Source of the DNA: Zygnema circumcarinatum SAG 698-1b | Lineage: Eukaryota; Plantae; Zygnematophyceae | NCBI GenBank assembly: GCA_037447605.1 | Contig: CM074822.1 | Location: 581,492-645,491 of the forward strand | Length of the DNA stretch: 64,000 nt | Direction: 5' to 3' | In this document: piece by piece, positions 13,511 through 45,970 of the stretch | How the letters are laid out: every line of letters begins with the position of its first letter | How positions within the stretch are numbered: the first letter of the stretch is position 1 | Position numbers and translations under genes: made by a program | The notes under the pieces: model-generated | What the model saw: the letters and a program-made list of their open reading frames with translations, nothing else | What the model was told of the DNA's origin: nothing | Database searches by the model: none

Positions 13511-14138
13511 ATATGCAGTTATTCATGCCACAAATTGCCACACATCCATTTAAAGCAGCATCAGGTCTCAAATGGTTCAGACGATGTGGCACTGACATTG
13601 ATCTGGCGATGGCTGCACCATGACACGTGTACATGGACAAAGGCAATGTGAATGAAGCAATGTGATCGGGCCACAGGTGATGATGATATATGACAGAAAA
13701 GAAAACAAAAGGCTGTGAGCGGATCATCCCATAGCAGGACTCCCATGGCGACATCATCCTCTGCGCTTCCGCCATGGGAAGGCAGCAGCCAGGAGGCAGA
13801 GCTGCACATCGCCAACTAATCCCAACCCTAACCCTAATCCTAACCCTAACCCTAACCCTAACCCAACCCGCGTTGCAGTCAAAGCCTGCAACTCTAAGAG
13901 CGCCATGACGACGTCTGTCTACTCCTTTCAGACAGCCTCGTCTTTCACTTCCCTCAACCCTCTCTACTTCTGCAGGACGCAGCAAAAGACATCTCAGCGG
14001 ACCAATGTTCAACGACCAATGTGAATTTCCGGAGGGGCATCATCATCGCCAACTATAAAAGAATGCAGGTTTGCTACAGCGATGCTTTTCAACAACAAAT
14101 GGCAAAGTCTCTATGCTGTCAATAACACTTGATATACG

Positions 14139-16953
14139 CTAAGCTGCCTCCTTTCGCCATTCTTCCTTCGTGACAAGCCCTAATTCAGCGTTCACAGCCT
14201 GGCGAAGTTCCTGCCCAGCATATGATGTCTCATCAATGTCAAGTATTACAGCAACTCTGTGCATGGCGTCATCCCACTGCGTCCTCTGCGGCGGAGAGCT
14301 CTGCTTAAAAGTTGAGGTGAAAGACCTAGAAAATGTATGGGAACCCAAACCAGATAGTATATCCGTAGAAGGTGGTCTGAAGCCTGACTTGAATGCCTCA
14401 CAGACGGACTCACTAGCGGAAGCAGTCAGATTGAAAGTATTCTTCGGCAGTCCGCCTGCTGATGATCCTTCATTTTTCTCGAAATATGGCAGTTTCTGCA
14501 AGTCGCCGGTTCTCTGAGGCAGGTTTCCCAAAGGTAGGGCAGGAAGCTGAGCTGTTCCAACAGATATCTCTCTCTCTCTCCCTCCTACATTCTCTTCCAC
14601 CTCTTCCTCTTCCCGGCACGGAATCTCTTGTGTATGGACCCATCCCCAGCTCACTCTTTTGCTTTTGCTAGACGTTCGTTCAATCACAGTTGTTGGCGCA
14701 CTTGTTTCTCCCTCTTCTGAGTTGGAGGGACTCGGTTTTTCAATGCGTAGAATGGGGCTAGGTTTCGGACTGCAACTTCTGACAGGACTCAAAATTCTTG
14801 TGGTGATTTCACTCCTTTCCAGCAGTGGCAGAGGCAGCTTCGCGAAGCTCTCCATCATGTCTTCCCTAATTTTTAGGGTTTGCTGAGAATTGAGAGATCT
14901 CGTTGTTGAAGTTTTCACATCCTGCTCAATGTTTAGAAGGTCATCCACATTCCTCGTCCTAATTGTAATGGTTTCTCCATTCTCCACATTTGCCGTGCCC
15001 TTTTTTTCAACAATAACGCTCTCCTCCATCCTTTTCTCCTCTCCTTCCTGTACTTCATTTCCTGCAGCTTTTTGAGGCACCCTCGCTTTCACTATTGGTG
15101 GACTACTCGCCCCTGTTGCAGTAAAGTCACTTCGGAACTCAGAAGCCGAAATTGCAAAAGAGGTACGCCTTGTCCTGTGGCTGTAGTGCCCTGATCGGGT
15201 ATAGGCACCCACCTCTCCTCCACCTTGTGTCACTACCTCCTCTCTCCCACCAGCTACCCCAACCTTCGTTTGCGTAACTTCAAAAGTCTGTCCACGTATG
15301 GCAATGTTTCTTCCATTGCCTTCCATTCCTTGAGCAAATTCATTCTGCATTTTCCCTTCCTCCCCATCCTCGACATCATCCATGCTAACGCTAATTTCAA
15401 ACTTGCTTTCCTTTAAAAGAACCTCCCTCCCTCTCTCCTCTTCTTCTTCCAAACTTTCCCTCTCCGATTCAACCCTGACCTTTGCATTAAACTCAGCCAT
15501 TCTCTGCTCCGATCCATTCACCAGAGCAGTAGACATTTCTGCTTCAGACTCTTCTCTTTTCTCTGCAGAGACCTGCACTTCAGCCTCTTTATGAGATGCT
15601 AAATTCTGCTGATTCCCGGATTGCTTCAACATCCAAGTACTGCTGGTTTTTATATACATTCTTGCCCCTGCCCGGCCTACCCCTTCCAATATCCTGCCTT
15701 TAAAGCAGGGCCTTGATTGCCGAGCCCTCTCTTTGACCCACCTGGGAACAACAACTGCATACTTATCAAAGCTCTCATCTACTCTATGCTGATCCATCTC
15801 CTGCTCAATTTCATTCCCACGTTGAATATGAGCATTAGGGCTATGTGGTGTGCAGCTACTCGAGGTCGGAGTAACCCTTGATGAAGTCATTGGAGAACCC
15901 TCCGAAGCTCTCAGAAACCTCTTTGGCATGACTTTAACGAGACGCTGCCAGCTTGCATAGGACTGGGCTATGACCACCATAGCGAGTGCTCTCTCTGCCA
16001 CGTGCTCGTTCAGACCGAACAAATTTTCTGGCTCTCCTGCATACAAACAAACACAGAGAGAAAGGTGAAATTTTTGACTCAGAACACGAACAAAACACTC
16101 GTTCTCAGTCATCTTCAATCACTCAGAGCCTTATTCAACAACTACAAGTACTAATTAGAACAATAATACTATATATACTTCAAAAGAGCCCTAATCTGCT
16201 GCTGCTGCTGCTCTTTAAGCATATACCTCGCTTCACGCATCGGCAGACTCGCAGCCATTCCCGAACCTCCTCAAGCCTGAAAGGCATCTCCCTATGCACA
16301 TCATCCACATCATGCAGCCTCTCTGCCGCCACATCGTCCAATGGGATCGCGAGAATCTGCCACGTCAGCTCCGCCTGCACGGGGTCCACCACAGCAAAGG
16401 CCCCCAACACCTTCACATTGTAGACCTCCCCTCTCTCCCTCCCCGCCGCCCCTATCTCCACCACCTCCATGGCCTGCCCCCGGTAAGGGAGCCCTCCGAA
16501 CTCAGAATTGACCTGCTTGGGATCGGCCCATGTCTGCGGAAGGATGCCAATGTTCCATGGAGCTGGATGTGCCAGGACTCCCTCCTCCTCTCCCTCTCCC
16601 CCCTCCTCTCCCACCCCCCCTCGCTGCTTCACCTTCAACAGAGGCTCCTCCTTTGCAAACATGCGATTCTCCCGAGTGCCACGTGGCGTCTTACAGATCA
16701 GATTGAGCCCTCCCCGAGAGCTGTAGAGAGGGATGACATGCCATGGCGATGTGGGCTCTCGCCCTCCTCCTCCTCCTCCCCCTCCTCCACCTCCCCATCC
16801 TCCACCTCGTCCTCCTCCTCTTTCTCCCCCTCCTCCTCCTCCTCTTTCTCCTCCCCCTCCCCCCCCCCTCCCTCGTCCTCTCCCTCCTCCTCTTTCTCCT
16901 CCCCTTCCTCCCCCCCCTCCTCCTCCTCCTCCTCCTCCTGCTTTCCCATCCAT
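14139..16953 (-). CDS. Family I soluble inorganic pyrophosphatase-like protein (catalytic residues lost) with a long disordered C-terminal extension
   Basis: Exons 16953-16227 and 16036-14139 (phase 1, GT-AG). Colinear with eukaryotic/plastid sPPase: SPWHVIPL, WNIGILPQTWADP, EVVEIG, LAIPLDD, GEPENLFGL, SWQRLV. Confidence 0.85.
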
Positions 16954-17762
16954 TGAAGGGCTTCTCCTCCTCGTTGCCCGCCAAAGACGAGGCTCTATGG
17001 CTCCTTACGGATTTATAATTACGTTTTTGAATGGGAAGTGTTTTTATCTAAAGTGGGTTCTTGTTGAATGGCCGTTGAAGGGAAGATTAAACGGACTGAG
17101 ATTTTGGGGTGTCTTCCACGAATTAGGGAAGGCAAGGGAGAGGGAGGGGGAGAAGGAGTGTGAGGAAGAGACAAGGAGAGGGAGAAGGAGAGGGAGGAGA
17201 GAGAGAGTGGAAGAGGGGGAGGCGACGGAGAGGGAGGAACGGAGGGGAGGGAGAGGGGGAGGATATGAGAGAGAGAGAAAGAAAGAGAGAGAGGGAGGGA
17301 GGGGTGGTGGAGTGGGAGATAGAGAGAGATAGAGAGAGAGGGAGGGAGGGGAAGGGGAAGAGGAGATAGAGATAGATAGAGAGAGAGGGAGGGGAGGGGG
17401 AGGGGGAGGGGGAGAGAAAGAGAGAGAGGAAGGGAAGGCAGGGGGAGAAAGTGATAGAGAGAAATAGAGAGAGAGGGGAAGGGAGAGTGAGAGAGAGATA
17501 AATAAAGAGAGGGAGGGAAGAGAGGGGAAGAGAGGGAGAGATAGTGAGAGAGGGAGTGAGGGAAGTGAGCGGGAGGGAGCGATAGAGAGAAATAGAGAGA
17601 AAGGGAGGAAAAGTGAGAGAGAAATTAAGTTATAGTGGGAAGGGAGGGGGAGGGATAGAGAGATAGGGAGGGAGAGAAGGGAGTGGGAGAGAGCAAGAGA
17701 GTGAAAGACTTAGGGATAGAGAGGGAGGGAGGGAAGGGAGAGGGAGAGAGAGAGAGCGATTT

Positions 17763-17801
<39 letters not shown>

Positions 17802-17849
17802 GGAGGAGGCGGCTGACGCCGTCGGACCCTCGGCAACTGCAGCGCGCCA

Positions 17850-18310
17850 AACAGCGCGTGACGTGACATCATCGTAGTCCACGGAGTTGCCACGTGGCGT
17901 CGCGGCAGCCGAGGACTGCCATGTCGGCAGAAAGCGACAACCGGCCCGGTCGGTGGCGCGCCACGTGGCAGTGGCTGAGACGAGAGTACGAATTTCAATG
18001 ACACGTCCCGACAAAGTCCCGATATTTTGTCGTTTTCTGAACTACCGTACCGTACCGTACAAATCGCACGAGAAAATTTTAAGCAATAAGTACGTGCCAC
18101 GTGGACGCGGACTTGTGGCTGCACCGATGGGCGCCACGTTCGTTTTCTGTCGTCTAGTGCCTTAGCGAGCTAACTTTCCGGTACCAAGGGTACGGACGAT
18201 TTCTGTTTTTCAGATAGACAAAATAATCGTTTCCAAATCGTAATTTTTTTTTTCAACTGGCCAATGGAGGTGCCCCACGTGTGCAATCGTGCCGACGTGG
18301 CCGATCCATG
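17850..18310. promoter_or_regulatory. Divergent promoter region (PPase-like / MiaB) with a G-box cluster
   Basis: Multiple CCACGTGG/CACGTG motifs between two head-to-head start codons. Confidence 0.4.
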
Positions 18311-21700: not shown

Positions 21701-23376
21701 CGTCGTGCCAGCTGTCAGGGGTGTGGAGCAATCCCGGGAACCGGATGCCATTCGCCGCGAAATGTTAGCACTTGGAGAAGCAGGGTGTGTGCTCCTATCC
21801 TCATTCACATTTGAAGACTAAGAAGTGAACAATTTGTGCCCATAATTCTGCATATCCAAAGATATAGGTTTTACCTCTGCAGGTGACCTTTTCTATGAAC
21901 ACAGTTCATCGTCTTTAGTGAGGGCATGCAAATTTGTGTGGTGAAGGGAACGCATACCCATGGAACCCTAGTAGTTCCCAAACTAATTAGAAGAACCCTA
22001 CCCTGACCCTAACCTTTACCCTAGCCCTAACCCTAACCCAAACCCTAACCCTAATCCCAACCCTAATCCAAACCCTAACCCTAACCCTAACCCTAACCCT
22101 AACCCTAACCCTAACCCTAACCCTAACCCTAACCCTAACCCTAACCCTAACCCTAACCCTAACCCTAACCCTAACCCTAACCCTAACCCTAACCCTAACC
22201 CATGTCTAGGCGATTCATCACTTAGTGCATGGGCGCATTATGCGGTTGCAGAATAGTAGGGTCCACACTATTGGAGATAAACCGGGTGAAGAAATAGAAA
22301 TAGCAAAGCAATTAGAGTAGCCTCCACTAAACACAATGAAGAGTGTGGCTTTCTTCTCACTTTCAGCAAGGATTTCTGATCAAGCGCCAGTCCATTTCCT
22401 TTTTCCCTCCTCCTCCCCCTCCCCTCCCCTCCCCCCTCCCTCCCCTCCCCTCCCTCCCTCCCTCCCCCTCCCTCCCCTCCCTCCCCTCCCTCCCCCCCTC
22501 CCTCCTTCCCTCCCCCCCTCCCTCCCCCCCTCCCCCCCTCCCCCTCCCTCCCTCCCTCCCTCCCTCCCTCCCCCTCCCTCCCCCTCCCTCCCTCCCTCTC
22601 CCTCCTCCTCCCTCCCCCCCCCTCCCCCTCCCTCCCTCCCTCCCTCCCCCTCTCCCCCTCCCTCCCTCCCTCCCTCCCTCCCCCCCTCCCTCCCCTCCCT
22701 CCCTCCCCTCCCTCCCTCCCTCCCTCCCTCCCTCCCCCCCTCCCCCCTCCCTCCCTCCCCTCCCCTCCCCCTCCCTCCCCTCCCTCCTCCCCCTCCCCCC
22801 CTCCCTCCCTCCCTCCCTCCCTCCCCTCCCTCCCCCTCCCTCCCCCCCTCCCTCCCTCCCTCCCCCTCCCTCCCCTCCCCCTCCCCCTCCCTCCCTCCCT
22901 CCCTCCCCTCCTCCCTCCCTCCCTCCCCCCCTCCCCTCCCTCCCTCCCCCTCCCTCCCTCCCTCCCTCCCCTCCCCCCCTCCCTCTCCCCCTCCCCCCTC
23001 CTCCCCTCCCCCCCCCCCTCCCTCCCTCCCTCCTCCTCCCCTCCCTCCCTCCCTCCCTCCCCTCCCCCCCTCCCTCCCCTCCTCCCTCCCTCCCTCCCTC
23101 CCTCCCTCCCTCCCCTCCCCCCTCCTTCCCTCCCCCTCCCCTCCCTCCAGGTACAAGGAGGTGACCCTCCTCGGTCAGAACATCGACGCGTACGGCCGCG
23201 ACCTGGGCGGGTCCGCCCTGGACGGCTCCCCGCGGCGGCGATGGACGCTCACGGACCTCCTCCGGCACGTGCACGATGTGCCCGGAATAGAACGGATACG
23301 CTTCGCCACATCGCATGTATGTATGTATGTGTGCAGGGAAGGGAAGGGAACCATCTCTCTCTCTCTCTCGCTCTCT

Positions 23377-31599: not shown

Positions 31600-32164
31600 G
31601 GCTGCCCTGTCTGTGCGAATCCACTTCACCGACCCAGGGTCTTCTAAACCCTAAACCCTAAACCTAACCCTAAACCGAAACCATGAACCCTAAAAGCCAA
31701 AAGAGGGAGAAAAGGACAGCCTGGCGCTTAGGCTTGCGTTACTTTGATTCCAAAGGAGGGCCAGGGCGCCGCCTTCGCCCTCTTCTTGCGCGATAGTGTG
31801 TGTGTGTGAGAGAGAGAGGGGGGGAGGAGAGAGAGAGAGAGGAAGGAGAGGGGGGAGAGAGACAGAGAGGCGGGATGAGAGGGAGAGAGAGGGGGGGAGA
31901 GATGGAGAGAGGAGAGGAAGAGACAAAAGGGGGGAGCGAGAGAGAGTGAGAGAGAGAGTTGAGAGAAATGCTCACGCAGAAGATTCTAAAATTTAGGGTT
32001 GTGGTTGTGTCTCCGCGGTTGTAGGGTTTCTAAGGGTTCAGAGAGCAGCAGATATGCAGGCGAGGGCGGGCCTGCAGCGGGGGAAGCTGACAGGGGCAGT
32101 ACGGCCCTCCCAGACTCTCTCAAGAGGTGGTGGTCAAGTGCGGGAGGGAGCGGGGTCGAGGGCT

Positions 32165-32217
32165 CAGGGTTTAGGGTTAGGGTTTAGGATTAGGGTTAGG
32201 GTTAGGGTTTAGGGTTG

Positions 32218-32253
<36 letters not shown>

Positions 32254-32895
32254 TAGGGTTGAGGGGTTTAGGGTTCAGGGTTCAGGGTTTGCGGTGTACG
32301 GTGAGGGTTTAGGGTTTACGGTTAGGGTTTAGGGTTGAGGGGTATAGGGTTTAGAATTTAGGGTTAGGGATTGGACTGTAGAGTGTAGGTTAGGGTTGAA
32401 AATTTTGAGAATTAAGTAGGGTTTGGGTTAAGGAATTGATGGTTTAGGGTTTTAGAATTTGTGGTTGAAAATTTAGAGCTTACGTTTACGGTTCAGGGTT
32501 TAAGGTTTGAGATTTAGGGTTAAGGGTTAGAGTTTAGGGTTTGAAATTTGAGTTTAGTTTTAGAGTTAGGGTTTAGGAGTTTTAGGGTTTATCGAAATAA
32601 GGTTTAGGGTTAAGTGTTTAGGGTTCTACGATCTATGGTTTAGGATGGGATATTTGATTTTAGGGTTTAGGCTGAAGGGTTTAAGGTTTTGGGTTTAGCG
32701 TTTAGGAGTTTAGGGTTTAGGGTTTAGGGATTAGGGTTTAGGGTTTAGAGTTTAGGGTTTAGGGGTTTAGGATTTAGGGAGAAGGGTCTAGGGTTTAGGA
32801 TTTAGGGAGAAGGGTTTAGGATTTAGGGTTTAGGGTCTAGGGGTTTAGGGTTTAGGGTTTAGGATTCAGGGTAAAAGGTTTAGGTTTAGGGTTTA
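32165..32895. repeat. Degenerate telomere-like array (mixed TTAGGG/TTTAGGG) upstream of the RPC34 CDS
   Basis: Dozens of GGGTTTA/GGGTTA units with variants. Confidence 0.85.
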
Positions 32896-37592: not shown

Positions 37593-39220
37593 CACTTTCG
37601 AGAAGGTTTTGATGTTATTTCAGAACTCTTATCAGAGTTAAATGCTTCACCATAAATTCAGATTCCATGTAGAAACAAGGCTTCCTTTTTCAGGATGGCG
37701 ACTCCGCGGGCCATCGTTGGATTTCTAAGACTACTAAGGTTCAGTGTAAGCATTCAAAGCCAAAGTACTTATCTAGGGATTCGGTTTCAAGCAAAAAAAA
37801 CTTCAGCAACGTTAGATTTGAAGATCTTTCGAGAATTTAGACTCTGCTTGAGTTCAAACTTCCACTTGGGTTATGGAAAACCAAAACTGAGTTTCCTGAA
37901 AACCACTCTTAAGTAAAAAGGAAAAGGAAGTATTGATCGCACACCTGCAGCAGGATTCTAAATATATTCCTTAACAGTATCAAACTGTATGCTGACTCAA
38001 TCGCCCTCCCCTTGCGGCGCCTTCTTAAGCACTGGAGCTCACCGCCATAGCTATGGACTCTCTGAAGAGGAGAGGACGAACCCAAATATGGTGAATCTAA
38101 CTCTTGAAACTCCGCTAAAAACACCATATTCAAAAGCAAACGAATTACGGTATGCCACGTGTTACACTTTGCTGACATGGTAGACTGTGATTGGCGGAAC
38201 TATTAGGGTATCTTTTTACGAATTCCAATATTCCGACAGCTCAGAGTATTTTGAACCAATTAAGAATTGACACGTGGTCCATTTAAATCTCGTCACGTGT
38301 CATACCCTATTTTTCTATTCGGGCACGAAAGCGAGACCCCGAATTATTTAGCGTCCCCGTAGGCTTAGAAATGGCCATCGACATTTTATCGGGTCCGTTC
38401 GCACCTGCGAGTTGACATCAGCAATGTTGAACCACTTCAGCATTCAAGGCTTTCTCTCTGTCCTTATGTCCGTTGTGACCGCTTCTTTTGGTTCCTTATG
38501 TCGATTTTATCCATGTACATTTGATGGCCTTGCCATCGTGAGTTCAATCAAACATCTTTTTTCTTCAGCATTCGTTCAACTAAATTGACGAAGTTGAACC
38601 ATGAAGACGCACCGTATTTATGTAAAAGTGGAACAGCAATTTCCTCGGGATACTGTACATATCTACAAAAAATTTCTATTCAGTGAAACTGGCATTTTTG
38701 TAGTTTGTCCACTATCCAGTAGAACTGGTGAATTTCCAGTTTACCCTATCTCCAGTACAGTTGGAGTTTTCCCAGTTTAACCTACCGGACTCGAGCATAG
38801 AGCAGGATGCATAGGTGCACAGCCCTGCCAAGATTCCGTACAAACCCAAATCCAGGTGACGGAATTCGATTTCAGAAAACCAGATCGCACAAAATCTGTA
38901 TTTGTACGGACCTCGTGCGGTCCAATAGGAAGCGACCGCGAGGGGACTCCCGAGGACCACTCTGTCACGTAGACCAATTGAAGTTTACACTGTACGGACA
39001 CGTGGCATGTAAACATTGGCGGCTGGATCTCTTGTGAAGGTATCGGAAAAACGAACCAATCAAAGATTTCCACGTCTGCTCCTAGACACGTGTCATACCG
39101 TGACTGGTCAGAGTAAACGGGCGCAGCGCGCGCGCGCGGAATGAAGGCGGCGCGCGCTCTCCCTCCCGCACTCCTCCCTCTCCCTCCCATACCCTCCGTC
39201 TCCCTCTCTCCACATCTCTC

Positions 39221-39253
<33 letters not shown>

Positions 39254-39333
39254 CCTCGCCCTCTCTTTCACATCTCCCCCTCTCTCTCTCTCATCCCTCT
39301 CACCTCTCTCCCCTCCCTCGCACATTCCGAACC

Positions 39334-40468
39334 ATGTCGACTCTCAGAGAGGGCACCTCTCTGCTCATGGCGAAGAACTATGGCTACTCTGCCGTCAATA
39401 CCCACCCCTGGGACGAATGGGAAGCCGGCTTGGCACGTGCGAGCGACTCCAAGTCCCGTGAAAGAGCAATGAAGGCCCGCATGGTGGCCCTAGCCGCGAC
39501 CCTCACATTGGCCTGCATGGCCGCCGGCTTCTTCTTCTGCTTCCTCCCGGCAGGGCCCGGCTCTCATTCCCACCATGGAAGGCGGCGGCTGAAAGGGGCG
39601 ACCGCGGTCACAGTTTCGGTTACAGACTTGGAGGCTCTCCGGGCGGCAAAAGTGATTCCTGATGTTCTGGACGAGTTCACGCCCACCGTTGAGATCTCCG
39701 TCGTGTACAAAGATCGGACGGTTAAGAATGGAGATGAGCTTACGGCTCACGATCTGACGCCTTTCTTTGTGGGTTCAGGGCCGAACTTCACCGTTGGGGG
39801 TTCAAGCTCGTCACTGTACTCTCTGGTATGGGATACTTTACTTAGCTTTAAAAAAAAAGTAATACTTATTATTGATGATTTATTTGATTTGCAATCTTAA
39901 TTTTTTAAAAAGAATAGTTATGAGTGCTTAATTTCAATGAGATCAGGCTGTTAACTACCATACAGGCACTATAAACTCTGCTATTTTACGGTTTTTTTGC
40001 ATGCTATTAGAGCTATCTATCTTTCTTTGTGCCAAGGCATGGAGAAGAATAGAGGAAGGTTTGCGAACAGAGTACAAAAAGAGAGTTTTTAATCAACTTT
40101 CAGCGAATTCTGAAAGAAAACTGAATTGTTTTTTGCAGGTGCTTGTCGACCCCGATGCTCCAAGTCCTGATTCCCCGACGGCTGCACAGTACCTTCACTG
40201 GTATAGGCTCTTCCCGCTACCTACTCTCTCAATTGTATAATTAATATAATAAATTCGCATCAAAGTCCTCTATTTGTGATGATAATGACTGCGAGAATTC
40301 GCCTCTCGAGTGCGCGCTCACTCAAGTACTGCTCATTCATTCGAATGAATTCAGCCTTCGAGCATTTGTTTCTTTGAGATCATCCTTTAGCTTTACGTAT
40401 TTCTTTCTGCGCTTGCAGGATGTGGGTGAATGTTCCCGGTCAGAGCGTTGTCCCAGGCAGTGGTGAGT

Positions 40469-40554
<86 letters not shown>

Positions 40555-41030
40555 CCTCTCTTCGCCTCCTATTTTCCTCTCATCCTCCACCTCGCCCTTC
40601 CTTCCTCCTCCCGCAACCCCCTCTCGTCTCTTTCCCCCCCCCCCACCCTCCCCCTCTCGCCCTCTCCCCCATCTTCTCCCTCACCCCCCTATCTCTCCCC
40701 TCCCCCTCTCTCCTCCTCCCCCAACCCCTCTCTCACCCCCTCTCTCCTACCTCTCCCTCTCCCGCAGGCGACGAGCTTGTGAAGTACACCGCTCCCAACC
40801 CCCCCTCCGGCCTCCACCGCTACGTGTTCGCCCTCTTCCTTCAACCCGCCGCCGTGGCTGCCTCCGCGCCCTCCTCTTTCTCCCTCTTCAGCACGAGGGA
40901 GTTCGCCTCCTCCTTCTCCCTCACCCCCGTCGCCTCCCTCTTCTTCCTCGCCCAGCGAGCCGAGGGGGTCATTGACGAGCTCGGCTCCGAACCCAAGGAC
41001 GAAGATACACTGAATGCGGTCGTGGTTTGA
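39334..41030 (+). CDS. PEBP (FT/TFL1/MFT-family) protein with N-terminal transmembrane anchor, paralogue 1
   Basis: Exons 39334-39825, 40139-40200 (62 nt), 40419-40462 (44 nt), 40768-41030. Motifs: VIPDVLD, VLVDPDAPSP, QYLHW, PNPPSGLHRYVFALF. Hydrophobic segment MVALAATLTLACMAAGFFFCFL. Confidence 0.92.
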
Positions 41031-41049
41031 GACGTGGAATCAGATCAAC

Positions 41050-41187
41050 CTGTGTGTCAACTTGTGGATCAACTTGTGGATCAACTTGTGGATCAGCCTG
41101 TGGATCGACTTGTGAATCAACTTGTGGATCGACTTGTGGATCAACTTGTGGATCGAGTTGTGGATCGAGTTGTGGATCGAGTTGTGG
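41050..41187. repeat. 12-bp tandem repeat TGTGGATC(A/G)A(C/G)T in the PEBP1 3' region
   Basis: About 11 copies. Confidence 0.9.
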
Positions 41188-43061
41188 GTAAATTATGTGT
41201 AGAAGTTAGAGCAATTGTGAGGTAGATCAGAAGTTAAATGCTTGCGTGAGATTCGCAGTGAGGATCCACTTGCTTCAAGTGAGTGCAGAGGTAACAAAGT
41301 TAGTTCATAGAGTGGATCCAAAAGCTAAACTTTTTTGATGGCTATTTAGATTTTTGTACAAATGTTTGTTTAGATCATCCTTTGTGTTTAGCACTCAACT
41401 AATTTTATTTCTCTGTGAGAATATGACGCCCTTTTTTTTTCCGGCAAAATTAAAATGAGGGGACCCTTTTGTGATTTATGGGCTTCATCGGAGGGCTTTT
41501 TCTCTACTAGTGATGGTGGCAATTTTTCATTTAATCATTTTCAATATTCAAAACTTTGAATATTGAATATTCTCAGAGCTTTCAAATACTTTTTCAAAAA
41601 GCTGTTGTGAGTTACTGATCGATCGCCTTTGAAACTTTGAATAGCAAAAATACAGACTCGAATTTCAGGTTTCTTTTTTTTTGTTTCACCCGAGTCATTG
41701 GTCAGCCCATCTGAACTTAAAGCCCTCCTGGATCCGCTTAACTGGCCTAACCCTAAACCCCAAACCCTAAAGCTTATACCCTAAACCCCAAACCCCAAAC
41801 CCCAAACCCTAAAGCCTTTACCCCAAACCATAAAACCTATACCCCAAAACCCTAAACCCCAAACGCCAAACCCTAAAGCCTATACCCCAAACCCTAACCC
41901 CAAAGTATACAGGTTTCTTGAATTTGCAACACCCCCCCCCCCCCNNNNNNNNNNCCCCCCCCCCCCCCCCCCCCCCCCCTGGAATAGCACGTATAGAAGA
42001 AATAAACTGAAAACTGACGCTTTCAGTCACTAGTTACAAGGCCAGTTCCACATGGAACAAGAGTGACACATGGCTGTTAACAGTAACGGAGCCTCAGTTT
42101 GGCAGCATTATGAGGCTTGCAGGCAACTCTTTTCCTTCTTGGTGCAAACTTTTACAGTACATCACATAGTGAGTTTTGATGCTCTACACTGAAAAAAAAC
42201 CCTTAAGGCCCTCCACACCCTAAAAACCCCAACAACCCTCAAGCCCAAAACCACCCTTATATCCCTAAAGCCTCTACCAACCTAACAGCCCTAAAGCCCC
42301 AAACAACCCTAAAGTAGGAAAGAAATCTGCATTGGTCCCACGATGACATGAAATGTACATGTTCAACAACAAAATGGGAAGAACAAAGAGGAAGCAACCG
42401 CTCACAAAGCACCTATGGACATTAGAAAAAAGCCATGAGCTGAAATGAGCCATGAGCTAACTCCTTCACCAAACTCTAACAACCCTAAAAACTAGGCTTA
42501 GTTCACAAACATCTTCATCAACATCACAAACATAGACTGGTGAAGGTTCAAAGCCTTTCTTAAGCATATCTCAAGCAGCATAAGAAAAAATCTTTGAGTC
42601 ATGGAATCAAGGACAAGTTGATTCATAAGTTTTACATCCTTCCTTGAGACAGGAGGGACCGGAGCTTACAATATGTACACTATATCTACAACTAAGCTCG
42701 AGCCTTTCAAAACGTGAGAAAGCACTGCCAGCAAAAAGCTTGATGCTATTCACACACTAAGGACCTAAGGTCTGCTAATTACAACTTTGAGAGGTACAAT
42801 GCCCAGCAGGGGCATTACTTTTCTTGCCATAAAAAAAGAAAAAGGTTGCGAGTTATAAGGCCACCTTTCTACAGTCCCTCTCTTCAGAATCTTAAGGATA
42901 AGAGCCATGAGAGAAGGAAAGGGGAGGGAGGGAGGGAGGGAGGGCTTGGTACAAGCAGGACCTTTTCTTGCCTTCAAAATTGGACCCTCCTGAGAGCTGA
43001 TGAAGAAAAGTTGAGATTAAAGAAATCCTAAACCCTAACCCTAAACACTAAACCCTAACCC

Positions 43062-45265
43062 TCACTCGTCTTCGTCTTGACTAGCTACAATATACACTGC
43101 CGCTGCGGGCTCTCCGAAGCCCATATATAAGGCGAATTTTTTTGTATGGAAGCCAATACGATGACCGGATACAGGCTCGTTGAGGATGGTCGGCTGCTTG
43201 AACAATACCAGAAGCAGTTTTTGCCCTTCTTGAATGAAACTTGGAGGTTTGTAAGAGACCACTTCCCAACCTGTATAGGGGAAGCAATCGACAGAGGCAG
43301 GCTTTTCAAAATGGTCAGAAAATCTTGCTATTTGGAGAGGTATAACAGAACATCATGCTCATTAGAATCTATCAATTGAGTGAGGGGTAATAGATAGACT
43401 CCAAAAATGCCAAAATTGAACTGTTTTGGTTCAATCAAACTTCTCGGTATATATCCAAATAAGAAAAGAAGCAAATGGAGGGGAGATGAGTGCAAAACAA
43501 AAGGAAGGAAAAGAAGAGAAGAGAAGGGAAGGGAAGGGAAGTTAATGACATAGTTTAGATCAGAGCAGAGCAGGAATATCTACGCTTATCACAGTGAAGC
43601 CAAACCCTTTCAGGATATGTTCAGACAGTTTCCAAAAAACAGCAGAAGCAAGTTTCAACTATTGGGCTGCTCCTTGTGTCTCATCAACAAAAGTATTTCT
43701 TCTTTTTGTCATAAAATTTCATCTCTTTAAGCATTTAAGCACCTCAAACTCGGAAGGGCAAAACGAAGCAGGAGAGGGCAAGTTAAGGAGCCTCTTTATT
43801 CAGCAGTAAAAGTTGAATGAAAAAAACTCTATCAGTATGCTCATGCTGGTTTGGATGCAGGCCGTACCGTCACGAGCAGAGCCGCCGCCAGGAATATTCA
43901 TCACATTCCTGTTGCAATAGAACAGTACAGAGGTGGCTCAGACACAAGAAAAGAAAAAAAACTCACAAAACCCTAAAAACTTGAACCAAGCATCTCGGTT
44001 GAAACTTTCTTAGTTTTGTCTTAAGAGTATAGAAGTTAACGATCAGAGACATTCAAGAAAAGAGAGAGTAGCCAAGGAAAGAGATTGAGATTAGGGAAAC
44101 GTTTAATGAAACATACCAGCAAGAAATAAGTTTTCTTTCACTTCCAAAAATTGTATCTCACATAAAAACCCTAAAAACCGAAAGTTCGATCGATGACTTA
44201 CCACATAAGAGTGCTAGGTTTTCGATCCTTGTGAGACTCGGGAACATCCAGGTCAATCATCAGCTGTAAGAACAGGTAAGAAATGCTTTAGATAGACAGA
44301 TTCTAAGTAGAAGGCTGTGAAGACAGCTGGAATTAAGCTATGTCTACATTATTTGTGGTTCTGCAATGTTCTCAACAAAATGCTCACCGTGCAACATTTT
44401 AAAAAAGCATTCACTAGATGCGTCGTCCTGAAGCAAATTATACTCAGTTATGCATTGCAAAGAAAAGAGTGCCTGCCTTCGTAAGCATGTGTGTGTGTGC
44501 GAGAGAGAGAGGGAGAGAGAGAGGGAGAGAGAGAGGAGAGAGAAACAGAGAAAAAAGAGAGAAAGAGGGAGAGAGAGAGAAAGAGCGGGAGAGAGAGAGA
44601 GAAAAACAGAGAAAAAAAGAGAGAGAGGGGAGATAGAGAGAGTGGGAAAGAGAGAGGGGAGAGAGAGTGGGAAAGAGAGAGAGAGGAGAGGGGAGAGAGG
44701 GGAGGGAGAGAGAAAGGGAGAAAGAGAGAGAGAGAGAGAAAGAGAGGAACAGAGAAAAAGAGAGGGAGAGTGAGAGGGAAAAAAGAGCGAGAGAGAGAGA
44801 GAGAGATTTTACCAAGGTGTACAAATCACTGTTGTTTCCTCTAACTCCGACCACTGGCGAAATGGCCAAATCAGAGACAGGCACTCGAGTTCCATCCATT
44901 GCCCTCCCGCCGCTGTAATGCACTTCCATGTCCACCGTCGGCGAAAACTCATCCAAAGCATCCTCAAAAACAGCGCCGTGTTGCATCCAATACGCGGAGG
45001 AGCCCTTCCTCTCCACTTCAAAAAGGTGCCGACGATGATGCAGGAAGCTCTTTGGATGAAAGATAAGAAAGGCGAGTGCCACAACGGCGATAGTCAGCAC
45101 AGTCCCGAGCCCGACCAGCATCACCTGCTTCCTCCTCTTCTCCTGCTTCACCTCTTGGTCCGTTAAGGGCGCCGAAATGGACCATGCGTGGACGGGCACA
45201 GACAGAGATACGCTTCCCTCTGCCGCCGCCATAAGCAAGCCCGTGCTCTCGCGCATGGTCGCCAT
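43062..45265 (-). CDS. PEBP-family protein with N-terminal transmembrane anchor, divergent paralogue 2
   Basis: Exons 45265-44813, 44263-44202 (62 nt), 43908-43868 (41 nt), 43270-43062. Motifs: DALDEFSPTVDMEVHY, LYTL|LMIDLDVP, MW|NVMNIPG, EVVSYKPP, LLVLFKQ. TM segment VMLVGLGTVLTIAVVALAFLIF. The 3' end could instead splice at GA|GTGAGG near 43066. Confidence 0.85.
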
Positions 45266-45569
45266 GGCGGCTACTGCTGCTGAGAGCAGGCTTTGCAGGA
45301 GAGCCCCTCCTTCTTGCGGAGAAAGGGCCTCTACTTCTTCCTCCTTCCTCTTGCTTCGTCCTCTCTGCCTCCGCTTGGTATGGTGTAGCTCTCTCTCTCT
45401 CTCCCTCTCTACCTCTCTCTCTCTCTCTTTCTCTCTCTCTGGCGGCTGAGAGATAGGAGGGAGTCGTCGACAGAGAGGAGAAGCTATGGCTGGCGGGGGA
45501 GAGAGGTAGGGAGGCCACGTCCCGACAAGCGGCGCCGCTCGCGCGCGCGCGCGCAATGGTGGAACCAAT

Positions 45570-45970
45570 GGAAGTGTGTCACGTGGCGGTTGGTGATTGG
45601 ACGAGATAAGAACGAGGTTCTATGAAGTGTCTTAGCGTAGTGTGTGACGCGTTTCAGGGTTCCATGTAGGGGGTGAGATGACATGGTACCCACGTGGCAA
45701 GTGCAATAATTTCAGCCAATAGTAAGAAAACACGTGTAAATTCGAGGTGGTCTGGATGCCACGTCAAGTGGTGTTGCCACGTTGGCTCGAGACCATCGAC
45801 CGCGGTGACCGCCGGTCAAGGTCATTTTTTGCAGAACGTTGGCGATGGCCGAGTCCGTGACCCGCGGTGGGCCACGGCGGACGCTTACGGACGGCCACGT
45901 GGATTGGAAAAAGCGGGTTATGATAGGCCCACATTGGTTCTAACAAATCGTGGCATCTGACGTGGCATGT
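45570..45970. promoter_or_regulatory. Divergent promoter (PEBP2 / DExH helicase) with ACGT/G-box cluster
   Basis: TCACGTGGC, CCACGTGGC, ACACGTGT, GCCACGTGG and GACGTGGC motifs. Confidence 0.4.

What the first reader, a model, noticed from the sequence alone, without database searches (positions are those of the whole stretch)
39334..39600. Both PEBPs conserve an acidic dileucine sorting signal and a post-TM RRxL motif: a candidate tether-and-release system
Seen: in otherwise dissimilar N-termini, the only conserved blocks are MSTLREGTSLLMA / MATMRESTGLLMA (E-x-x-x-L-L) and HHGRRRLK (39571-39594) / HHRRHLF (about 45040-45020), just after the TM helix. Established: [DE]xxxL[LI] binds AP adaptors and directs plant membrane proteins to the tonoplast/endosome; RRxL/RxxL is the Site-1 protease (SBT6.1) motif in pro-PMEs, RALF23 and bZIP17/28; yeast PEBP Tfs1 inhibits vacuolar carboxypeptidase Y. 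Inference: the proteins are sorted to the vacuole/endosome and cleaved to release a luminal PEBP acting as protease inhibitor, lipid binder or signal.
Basis: partly seen in the sequence, partly recalled or inferred. Interest (0 to 1): 0.75.

Follow-up and report, generated by a model that had tools for sequence, protein, structure and literature searches.

The report
Membrane-anchored PEBP pair with conserved motifs
Two neighbouring plant genes of the florigen (PEBP) family carry a membrane anchor flanked by two short motifs that are also kept in the only two relatives found elsewhere. This suggests, without proving, that the normally soluble protein is tethered to a membrane and cut loose by a protease.

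Summary
Both genes splice cleanly into 4-exon plant-type PEBPs: A at 39334-41030 (+) and B at 45265-43062 (-). Each has about 100 extra N-terminal residues holding one hydrophobic helix.

Only two relatives with this extension turned up in 1.84 and 5.8 billion proteins, both from transcriptomes. All four proteins start M-[AS]-T-[LM]-R-E-x-T-x-[LFI]-L-M-A. This block is 73% identical on average, against 39% for the PEBP domain and 18% for the rest of the tail. All four also have R-R-x-L 9-14 residues after the helix, in a linker that is otherwise unconserved and predicted to be disordered.

RRxL matches the plant S1P/subtilase processing motif. The strict acidic dileucine does not hold, because the first Leu is L, L, F and I, and the conservation reaches well beyond that motif.

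Topology is only weakly predicted (N-terminus in the cytosol). My best reading is a type II-anchored, MFT-derived PEBP released by RRxL cleavage, at about 0.4.

The scan had already noted a third membrane-anchored PEBP on another piece of this genome.

The parts
39334..39825 (+). PEBP-A exon 1 (164 codons): N-block, tail, membrane helix, linker and first part of the PEBP domain
   Evidence: ATG-to-GT donor model gives a 286-aa ORF over 4 GT-AG exons. It aligns without gaps across the junctions to the cDNA-derived orthologue L001.
40139..40200 (+). PEBP-A exon 2 (62 nt, holds DPDAPSP)
   Evidence: 62 nt is the classical size of plant PEBP exon 2.
40419..40462 (+). PEBP-A exon 3 (44 nt)
   Evidence: It has the same protein length as cDNA orthologue P0001x over this stretch.
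40768..41030 (+). PEBP-A exon 4 with GLHRY and the stop codon
   Evidence: Pfam PBP hit on this piece alone has E 0.0013, below the gathering cut-off.
39334..39372 (+). A N-block MSTLREGTSLLMA
   Evidence: mean pairwise identity 0.73 across the four proteins.
39484..39546 (+). A hydrophobic helix, residues 51-71
   Evidence: Mean Kyte-Doolittle 2.2 over 21 residues. The orthologue's equivalent segment is an AlphaFold2 helix.
39580..39591 (+). A RRRL (R83-L86), candidate subtilase/S1P-type site
44813..45265 (-). PEBP-B exon 1 (151 codons)
   Evidence: 254-aa ORF over 4 GT-AG exons.
44202..44263 (-). PEBP-B exon 2 (62 nt; DPDAP replaced by DLDVPES)
43868..43908 (-). PEBP-B exon 3 (41 nt)
43062..43270 (-). 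PEBP-B exon 4 (GxHRY replaced by EGQKLL) with the stop codon
45227..45265 (-). B N-block MATMRESTGLLMA
45062..45124 (-). B hydrophobic helix, residues 48-68
   Evidence: Mean Kyte-Doolittle 2.7.
45023..45034 (-). B RRHL (R78-L81)
38997..39094 (.). Cluster of 4 ACGTG[GT]C (ABRE/G-box-like) sites upstream of A
   Evidence: The motif is enriched across the whole window, so specificity to this gene is unproven.
45514..45966 (.). Cluster of 7 ACGTG[GT]C sites upstream of B

Best explanation
A and B are paralogues of a small, previously undescribed clade of MFT-derived plant PEBPs whose first exon grew upstream by about 100 codons. The extension makes a single-pass signal anchor, most likely type II. 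In that layout a disordered cytosolic tail of 45-50 residues begins with a strongly constrained 13-residue peptide, then comes one membrane helix, then a disordered luminal 'stem' of about 30 residues, and then the PEBP domain in the lumen of the secretory pathway. The invariant R-R-x-L in the stem is the recognition site of a Golgi or post-Golgi subtilase (S1P/SBT6.1-type or SBT3.5-type). Cleavage would release a soluble PEBP domain into the lumen or apoplast, much as membrane-anchored pro-pectin-methylesterases are released at RRLL/RKLL. The N-terminal peptide is a cytosolic short linear motif that controls trafficking or turnover of the precursor. It could be a dileucine-like adaptor signal, possibly regulated through the conserved R-x-x-T. 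Shown here: the gene models, the PEBP homology, the hydrophobic helix, the conservation of both motifs, and the predicted disorder around them. Inferred: the topology, the cleavage, the protease, the compartment, and the role of the N-block.
For: Both genes give 4-exon GT-AG models with the plant PEBP exon sizes. For orthologue P0001x the best solved relatives are Hd3a, FT and TFL1 at E 1e-31 to 5e-33 over residues 85-252, and nothing matches the first 84 residues. Pfam PBP hits have E 7e-12 and 2.5e-13. Only two relatives carry the extension. A, P0001x and P0002 form a clade with support 98/95 and 85/79. The N-block averages 0.73 identity, against 0.39 for the PEBP domain, 0.18 for the tail, and 0.13 for the linker without RRxL. 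It is retained even in B, whose PEBP domain sits on a branch of 2.8 substitutions per site and has lost the pocket residues. RRxL is present in 4 of 4, 9-14 residues after the uncharged run. Synonymous codon differences show the selection acts on the protein. AlphaFold2 gives a helix at 46-63 and low-confidence coil for the tail and the stem, including RRQL at 74-77. K/R lie directly against the N side of the helix in all four proteins; summed over 10-residue flanks the count is 16 versus 11. The basic residues on the N side drift in position as a generic topogenic flank would, whereas R-R-x-L is fixed, which argues for specific recognition. RRxL/RxxL is the documented S1P/SBT3.5 motif (PMC13082318). 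Pro-PMEs with a transmembrane domain are processed at RRLL/RKLL (PMC13477033). Secreted PEBPs exist in animals (PMC9369291, PMC8793217).
Against: The charge rule over 15-residue flanks is a tie for three of the four proteins, and His residues add positive character on the C side. The residue before the Leu (P2) is R, H, Q or L, whereas documented plant S1P sites mostly have a hydrophobic P2 such as RRIL or RRLL (PMC13082318). Sequons and cysteine counts do not favour a luminal domain. All other plant PEBPs act in the cytosol or nucleus. The conclusion rests on four sequences, two of them paralogues from one genome.
Confidence: 0.4

Rival explanations
1. Opposite topology or an organelle signal anchor. 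The helix inserts N-out/C-in, or into a plastid or mitochondrial outer membrane, so the PEBP domain stays in the cytosol like every other plant PEBP but is pinned to a membrane. The conserved RR (with His/Lys) after the helix is then the positively charged C-flank that sets orientation or targeting, not a protease site.
For: C-side flanks carry 3-5 K/R plus up to 4 His within 15 residues, and the 15-residue charge difference is zero in A, B and P0002. Plant PEBPs are otherwise cytosolic, and the literature lists no secreted plant PEBP (PMC8793217, PMC8408984). From established knowledge, signal-anchored outer-membrane proteins use a basic region C-terminal to the helix.
Against: K/R abut the N side of the helix in all four proteins, whereas the first residues on the C side are neutral or acidic in A and P0001x. 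A purely electrostatic flank would not hold R-R-x-L fixed, including the Leu, while the N-side charges drift. The helices are strongly hydrophobic, with Kyte-Doolittle 2.2-2.7, as expected for ER insertion. A 45-50-residue tail with a basic cluster is a poor candidate for translocation.
Confidence: 0.2
2. Anchored but not cleaved. The protein is a stable type II membrane protein. The N-block is a partner-binding or phospho-regulated peptide (R-x-x-T followed by a hydrophobic pair) or an N-terminal stability element. RRxL is a docking or stem-structure element, so nothing is released.
For: The N-block's invariant T3, R5, T8, M12 and A13 go beyond any dileucine consensus, and its first Leu varies as L, L, F, I. 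P2 of RRxL is not the usual hydrophobic residue. The N-block is the best-conserved part of the whole protein, which suggests the cytosolic tail itself, not a released domain, carries the key function. This holds even in B, whose PEBP pocket is gone.
Against: In a luminal disordered stem the only well-known reader of RRxL is a subtilase (PMC13082318). No alternative partner can be named.
Confidence: 0.25
3. The shared blocks are leftovers of common descent with no function, or the N-terminal extension is an annotation artefact and translation really starts downstream.
For: Only four sequences are available. No read evidence could be laid for this locus.
Against: An independent mRNA contig (L001) and a Trinity transcript (P0002) both carry the extension in frame, starting with the same block. 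Internal Met residues are not conserved. The blocks stand at 73% identity, and 100% at R, R and L, amid 13-18% surroundings, with synonymous codon turnover.
Confidence: 0.04

Closest known systems
MFT-like / FT / TFL1 plant PEBPs (Pfam PF01161, 'EuPEBP')
   Same: Same fold and the same 4-exon gene structure (62-nt exon 2, 41/44-nt exon 3). A keeps DPDAPSP and GLHRY. About 40% identity to MFT-like proteins, and Hd3a, FT and TFL1 are the best solved relatives.
   Different: About 100 extra N-terminal residues with a membrane helix and two conserved motifs. B has lost the anion-pocket residues. Surveys report only soluble MFT-like proteins in bryophytes and lycophytes (PMC8408984).
Type I (pro-)pectin methylesterases with N-terminal transmembrane anchor and RRLL/RKLL processing motif
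   Same: Both have an N-terminal anchor, a spacer, a dibasic-Leu motif, and a C-terminal domain that subtilases release in the secretory pathway (PMC13477033). P0002 even reads RRLL.
   Different: There is no PMEI-like pro-region. The motif lies only 9-14 residues from the helix, and the cargo is a PEBP domain. Cleavage has not been shown here.
S1P/SBT6.1 and SBT3.5 substrates (RALF23 RRIL, GLV1/CLEL6 RRLR and RRAL, PROSCOOP12 RRLM)
   Same: An RRxL / RxxL motif in a disordered luminal segment (PMC13082318).
   Different: Known sites mostly have a hydrophobic or small P2. Here P2 is R, H, Q or L. Those substrates are small secreted propeptides, not anchored globular domains.
Secreted animal PEBPs (mammalian PEBP4 and insect PEBPs)
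   Same: A PEBP domain routed into the secretory pathway by an N-terminal hydrophobic signal (PMC9369291, PMC8793217).
   Different: Those carry a cleavable signal peptide and have no long cytosolic tail, conserved N-block or RRxL. They arose independently.
Acidic dileucine [DE]xxxL[LI] tonoplast/endosome signals (VIT1, NRAMP3/4)
   Same: Glu at -4, a hydrophobic pair, and a position in a disordered N-terminal tail (PMC8905187).
   Different: The first Leu is not conserved (F and I in the orthologues). Five further invariant residues are not part of that motif. AP binding is untested.
Yeast Tfs1 (carboxypeptidase Y inhibitor)
   Same: PEBP fold only.
   Different: Tfs1 is a soluble cytosolic protein (PMC8793217). 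Nothing in these data bears on protease inhibition.

Membership tests
PEBP (PF01161), plant FT/TFL1/MFT type | Significant match to the PBP profile or to solved plant PEBPs | tested here: met
   Orthologues P0001x and P0002 hit PF01161 at E 7e-12 and 2.5e-13. Hd3a, FT and TFL1 match at E 5e-33 to 4e-31. A is 66% identical to P0001x over the domain. A's exon 4 alone scores E 0.0013, below the cut-off. The spliced A and B proteins could not be submitted by reference.
PEBP (PF01161), plant FT/TFL1/MFT type | Anion-pocket signatures D-P-D-x-P and G-x-H-R | tested here: met
   Met in A (DPDAPSP, GLHRY), P0001x and P0002. Not met in B (DLDVPES, EGQKLL). B is a pocket-less derivative.
PEBP (PF01161), plant FT/TFL1/MFT type | Four exons with a 62-nt exon 2 and a 41-nt exon 3 | tested here: met
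   B has 62 and 41 nt. A has 62 and 44 nt, and the extra codon is also present in cDNA orthologue P0001x.
Type II signal-anchor membrane protein | One internal hydrophobic helix of about 20 residues and no N-terminal signal peptide | tested here: met
   Mean Kyte-Doolittle 2.2-2.7 over 21 residues at positions 47-71 in all four. AlphaFold2 places a helix at 46-63 in P0001x.
Type II signal-anchor membrane protein | More positive flank on the N (cytosolic) side | tested here: inconclusive
   In 10-residue flanks K/R are 16 (N side) versus 11 (C side), and net charge is +13 versus +8. Over 15-residue flanks the sides tie in three of the four proteins.
S1P/SBT6.1-type subtilase substrate | RRxL / RxxL motif | tested here: met
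   RRRL, RRHL, RRQL and RRLL in 4 of 4. The motif definition comes from PMC13082318.
S1P/SBT6.1-type subtilase substrate | Motif lies in an exposed, unstructured segment | tested here: met
   AlphaFold2 of P0001x gives coil with pLDDT 55-61 for residues 64-84. This is a prediction only.
S1P/SBT6.1-type subtilase substrate | Motif faces the Golgi or secretory lumen | tested here: inconclusive
   This depends on topology.
S1P/SBT6.1-type subtilase substrate | Actual Arg-dependent cleavage | not testable with these tools
   It needs immunoblotting or N-terminomics.
Acidic dileucine sorting signal [DE]xxxL[LI] | Acidic residue at -4 and Leu at position 0 followed by L or I | tested here: not met
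   The sequences are EGTSLL, ESTGLL, ETTSFL and ETTSIL. Glu and the second Leu are invariant, but position 0 is L, L, F, I. The motif is met in A and B themselves but not across the clade.
Acidic dileucine sorting signal [DE]xxxL[LI] | Binding to the sigma/large-subunit hemicomplex of AP-1, AP-3 or AP-4 | not testable with these tools
   It needs yeast three-hybrid or pull-down experiments.

The most novel reading that the evidence does not exclude
A land-plant lineage has turned a florigen-family (MFT-type) PEBP into a membrane-tethered precursor. A subtilase cuts it at a conserved juxtamembrane RRxL and releases a soluble PEBP into the apoplast or an endomembrane lumen. That would be a secreted, proteolytically activated PEBP signal or inhibitor, controlled from the cytosol through an ultra-conserved 13-residue N-terminal peptide.
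Probability: 0.3. Interest if true: 0.75.

Novelty: new variant of a known kind. Interest (0 to 1): 0.55.

Why it matters
Plant PEBPs (FT, TFL1, MFT) are textbook soluble cytosolic and nuclear regulators. Surveys state that bryophyte-grade plants have only ordinary MFT-like proteins (PMC8408984), and a family-wide review lists secreted PEBPs only in animals and bacteria (PMC8793217). A clade with a membrane anchor would therefore be a new cell-biological mode for this family. Its best-conserved part is a 13-residue cytosolic peptide, not the PEBP domain. It also carries a canonical subtilase motif in the stem. The two motifs give precise, cheap mutational handles (RR to AA, and changes in the N-block), so localisation and processing can be tested directly. 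Paralogue B keeps both motifs while its ligand pocket has decayed, which suggests the anchor module carries function of its own.

Tried and rejected
The filter is stated to be no evidence of anything. No letters of 44685-44770 were sent to any search tool afterwards; I worked beside them, using exon 1 of B at 44813-45265.
- The word-based search with A exon 1 found nothing. It missed even P0001, so that blank is uninformative.
- Two profile searches and the exhaustive representative search found no family members beyond P0001 and P0002.
- A metagenome scan with the exon-1 profile matched 16 pattern stretches, and none was confirmed.
- An exact look-up of the genomic exon-1 ORF was not on record. 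P0002 has no contig on record.
- An ESM Atlas search with residues 1-95 gave no usable hit.
- Pfam on single exons was too weak to be useful.
- N-glycosylation sequons (1, 1, 1 and 3 on the C-terminal side, none in the tails) are at chance density. Cysteine counts do not differ from soluble plant PEBPs. Neither separates a luminal from a cytosolic domain.
- A twin-arginine (Tat) signal was rejected because the RR follows the hydrophobic segment instead of preceding it.
- A downstream start that would make a cleavable signal peptide was rejected because internal Met residues are not conserved, while the block at residue 1 is.
- A GOLPH3/Vps74-type (F/L)(L/I/V)xx(R/K) tail motif fits A only.
- The placement of B from its PEBP domain is unresolved because of its long branch. 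I assign it to the clade on the shared N-terminal module.
- The organism is coded. An SRR accession search in papers found nothing.

Full report
**What is there**

The window is eukaryotic, plant-type DNA. Around the finding lie two convergent genes.

- **Gene A (+ strand).** Exons are 39334-39825, 40139-40200, 40419-40462 and 40768-41030. All introns are GT-AG. The product has 286 residues.
- **Gene B (- strand).** Exons are 45265-44813, 44263-44202, 43908-43868 and 43270-43062. All introns are GT-AG. The product has 254 residues.

Exon 2 is 62 nt in both genes, and exon 3 is 41 nt in B and 44 nt in A. This is the classical gene structure of plant FT/TFL1/MFT PEBPs. A keeps the pocket signatures DPDAPSP and GLHRY. 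B has DLDVPES and EGQKLL instead. The two proteins are 29% identical over their whole length (E 2e-25). tblastn finds no further copy in the window.

**Checking the observation**

| Feature | A | B |
|---|---|---|
| N-terminal block | MSTLREGTSLLMA, 39334-39372 | MATMRESTGLLMA, 45265-45227 |
| Hydrophobic segment | residues 51-71, mean Kyte-Doolittle 2.2 | residues 48-68, mean Kyte-Doolittle 2.7 |
| Post-helix motif | HHGRRRLK, 39571-39594 | HHRRHLF, 45040-45020 |

Exon-1 identity between A and B is 32%, against 9/13 in the first block.

**Relatives**

- An exhaustive HMMER search of 1.84 billion representatives with A exon 1 returned only two true relatives, P0001 and P0002.
- Two profile searches of 5.8 billion proteins added none. 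The next-best hits were ordinary soluble MFT-like proteins at about 40% identity over the PEBP domain only.
- A metagenome scan found nothing.
- P0001 lies on a 1745-nt intron-less transcript contig, L001. Reading that contig shows the gene caller started at the second in-frame ATG. The first ATG, at L001:143, gives MSTMRETTSFLMA..., for a protein of 270 residues that I call P0001x.
- P0002 is a Trinity transcript product from EukProt and begins MATLRETTSILMA.
- In a tree of the PEBP domains, A groups with P0001x (support 98/95) and then with P0002 (85/79). B sits on a branch of 2.8 substitutions per site and cannot be placed from that domain.

**Conservation of the two motifs**

- All four proteins begin M-[AS]-T-[LM]-R-E-x-T-x-[LFI]-L-M-A.
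- All four have R-R-x-L (RRRL, RRHL, RRQL, RRLL) ending 9-14 residues after the uncharged run.
- RR.L is the only 3-of-4 residue pattern shared by the four linkers. None of 20,000 composition-preserving shuffles produced any shared pattern. That null ignores common descent, so it speaks to constraint and is not a true probability.
- Conserved residues are encoded by different synonymous codons in A, B and L001 (for example R5 as AGA/CGC/AGA and L11 as CTC/CTT/TTA). Selection therefore acts on the peptide, not on the RNA.
- B keeps both motifs although its ligand pocket has decayed.

Mean pairwise identity by region:

| Region | Mean identity |
|---|---|
| N-block | 0.73 |
| Rest of the tail | 0.18 |
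| Helix | 0.20 |
| Linker without RRxL | 0.13 |
| PEBP domain | 0.39 |

**Structure and topology**

AlphaFold2 on P0001x, with a 20-row alignment, gave a confident PEBP fold from residue 85. It gave a helix at 46-63 and low-confidence coil for the tail (1-45) and for the stem (64-84) that holds RRQL. Mean pLDDT was 77 and pTM 0.67. The N-terminal 84 residues match nothing in the PDB or Pfam.

Lys and Arg abut the N side of the helix in all four proteins, and the first C-side residues are neutral or acidic in A and P0001x. Summed over 10-residue flanks, K/R are 16 against 11. Over 15 residues three of the four proteins tie, and His residues add positive character on the C side. An N-in, type II topology is therefore favoured only modestly; I put it at about 0.65. 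Sequon density and cysteine counts do not help.

- **RRxL holds up.** It is the motif named for RALF23 processing by S1P/SBT6.1. RxxL/RxLx is also cut by SBT3.5 (PMC13082318). Membrane-anchored pro-PMEs are processed at RRLL/RKLL (PMC13477033). An invariant RRxL in a disordered stem right after a signal anchor fits that scheme well.
- **RRxL caveat.** P2 is R, H, Q or L, whereas most documented sites have a hydrophobic or small P2.
- **The strict dileucine does not hold up.** The consensus is [DE]xxxL[LI] (PMC8905187). Here position 0 is L, L, F, I. Five other invariant residues (T3, R5, T8, M12, A13) lie outside that motif. The block is clearly functional, but it is either a larger or a different linear motif. 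R-x-x-T next to a hydrophobic pair could be a phospho-regulated element; that is inference only.
- **P0001x has a second candidate.** It carries an ETPLL nearer the helix.
- **The model has an ordering problem.** S1P works in the Golgi, upstream of adaptor sorting at the TGN. If S1P is the protease, the released PEBP would follow default secretion to the apoplast and would not follow the tail to the vacuole. A post-Golgi subtilase would remove this conflict.
- **The Tfs1/carboxypeptidase idea is untouched by any result here.**

**Most likely mechanism and rivals**

| Reading | Confidence |
|---|---|
| Type II-anchored, MFT-derived PEBP precursor; the cytosolic N-block controls trafficking or turnover; a subtilase cuts at RRxL and frees the PEBP domain into the lumen or apoplast | about 0.4 |
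| Opposite or organellar topology, with a cytosolic PEBP and RR as a topogenic flank | 0.2 |
| Stable anchored protein, with both motifs serving as binding elements and no release | 0.25 |
| Artefact or phylogenetic inertia | 0.04 |

**Comparison with what is known**

- By homology these are members of the plant PEBP family. B is a pocket-less member.
- By mechanism they most resemble TM-anchored pro-PMEs and other S1P/subtilase substrates, but substrate status cannot be claimed.
- Searchable literature describes only soluble MFT-like PEBPs in bryophyte-grade plants (PMC8408984).
- It lists secreted PEBPs only from animals and a bacterium (PMC8793217, PMC9369291).
- I found no description of membrane-anchored plant PEBPs.
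- I rate this a new variant of a known kind.

**Limits**

- The organism is coded. I did not test that.
- Runs holding about half of the sampled words in 30-45 Mb contig sets look like transcriptomes. That is not proof of expression.
- The spliced A and B proteins could not be passed by reference. Family-level tests were therefore run on exon pieces and on the orthologues.
- The scan had already noted a third membrane-anchored, pocket-less PEBP on another piece of this genome (s1-390323).

Noticed in passing
window 38997-39094 and 45514-45966 (also 15997-18301): ACGTG[GT]C (ABRE/G-box-like) occurs 39 times in the window against 4.2 expected. It forms clusters of 4 and 7 sites upstream of PEBP-A and PEBP-B, and another dense cluster lies near 16-18.3 kb. 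This may indicate ABA or bZIP control as for MFT genes, but the enrichment is window-wide.
   Followed up: partly
window 13826-13861, 22025-22198, 31649-32857, 43033-43045: Interstitial arrays mix TTAGGG and TTTAGGG telomere-type repeats. A short one lies just 3' of the PEBP-B stop codon.
   Followed up: no
window 41040-41190: About 12 tandem copies of a 12-nt unit (CAACTTGTGGAT-like) lie immediately after the PEBP-A stop codon, in the presumed 3' UTR.
   Followed up: no
window 39160-39330, 40465-40765, 44500-44810, 45270-45480: Long CT/GA-rich low-complexity tracts fill the 5' leaders and one intron of both paralogues. The 5' UTR of the orthologous cDNA L001 (1-140) is CT-rich too. One such tract (44685-44770) tripped the reads filter.
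   Followed up: no
P0015 (Spirodela intermedia, 203 aa) and P0013 (metaclust, 244 aa): Two angiosperm-type MFT-like PEBPs begin with signal-peptide-like hydrophobic N-termini. They share the VIPDV start of the domain with the anchored clade, whereas soluble MFTs have VIGDV. Secretory-pathway PEBPs may be more widespread in plants than is described.
   Followed up: no
L001:143-175: The automatic gene call for P0001 starts at the second in-frame ATG and so cuts off the conserved N-terminal block. Database copies of this family may be systematically truncated.
   Followed up: yes
window 25322, 31135, 31478, 34110, 36871, 41945, 46266: There are seven 10-N assembly gaps in the window. Two of them flank the PEBP pair.
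   Followed up: no
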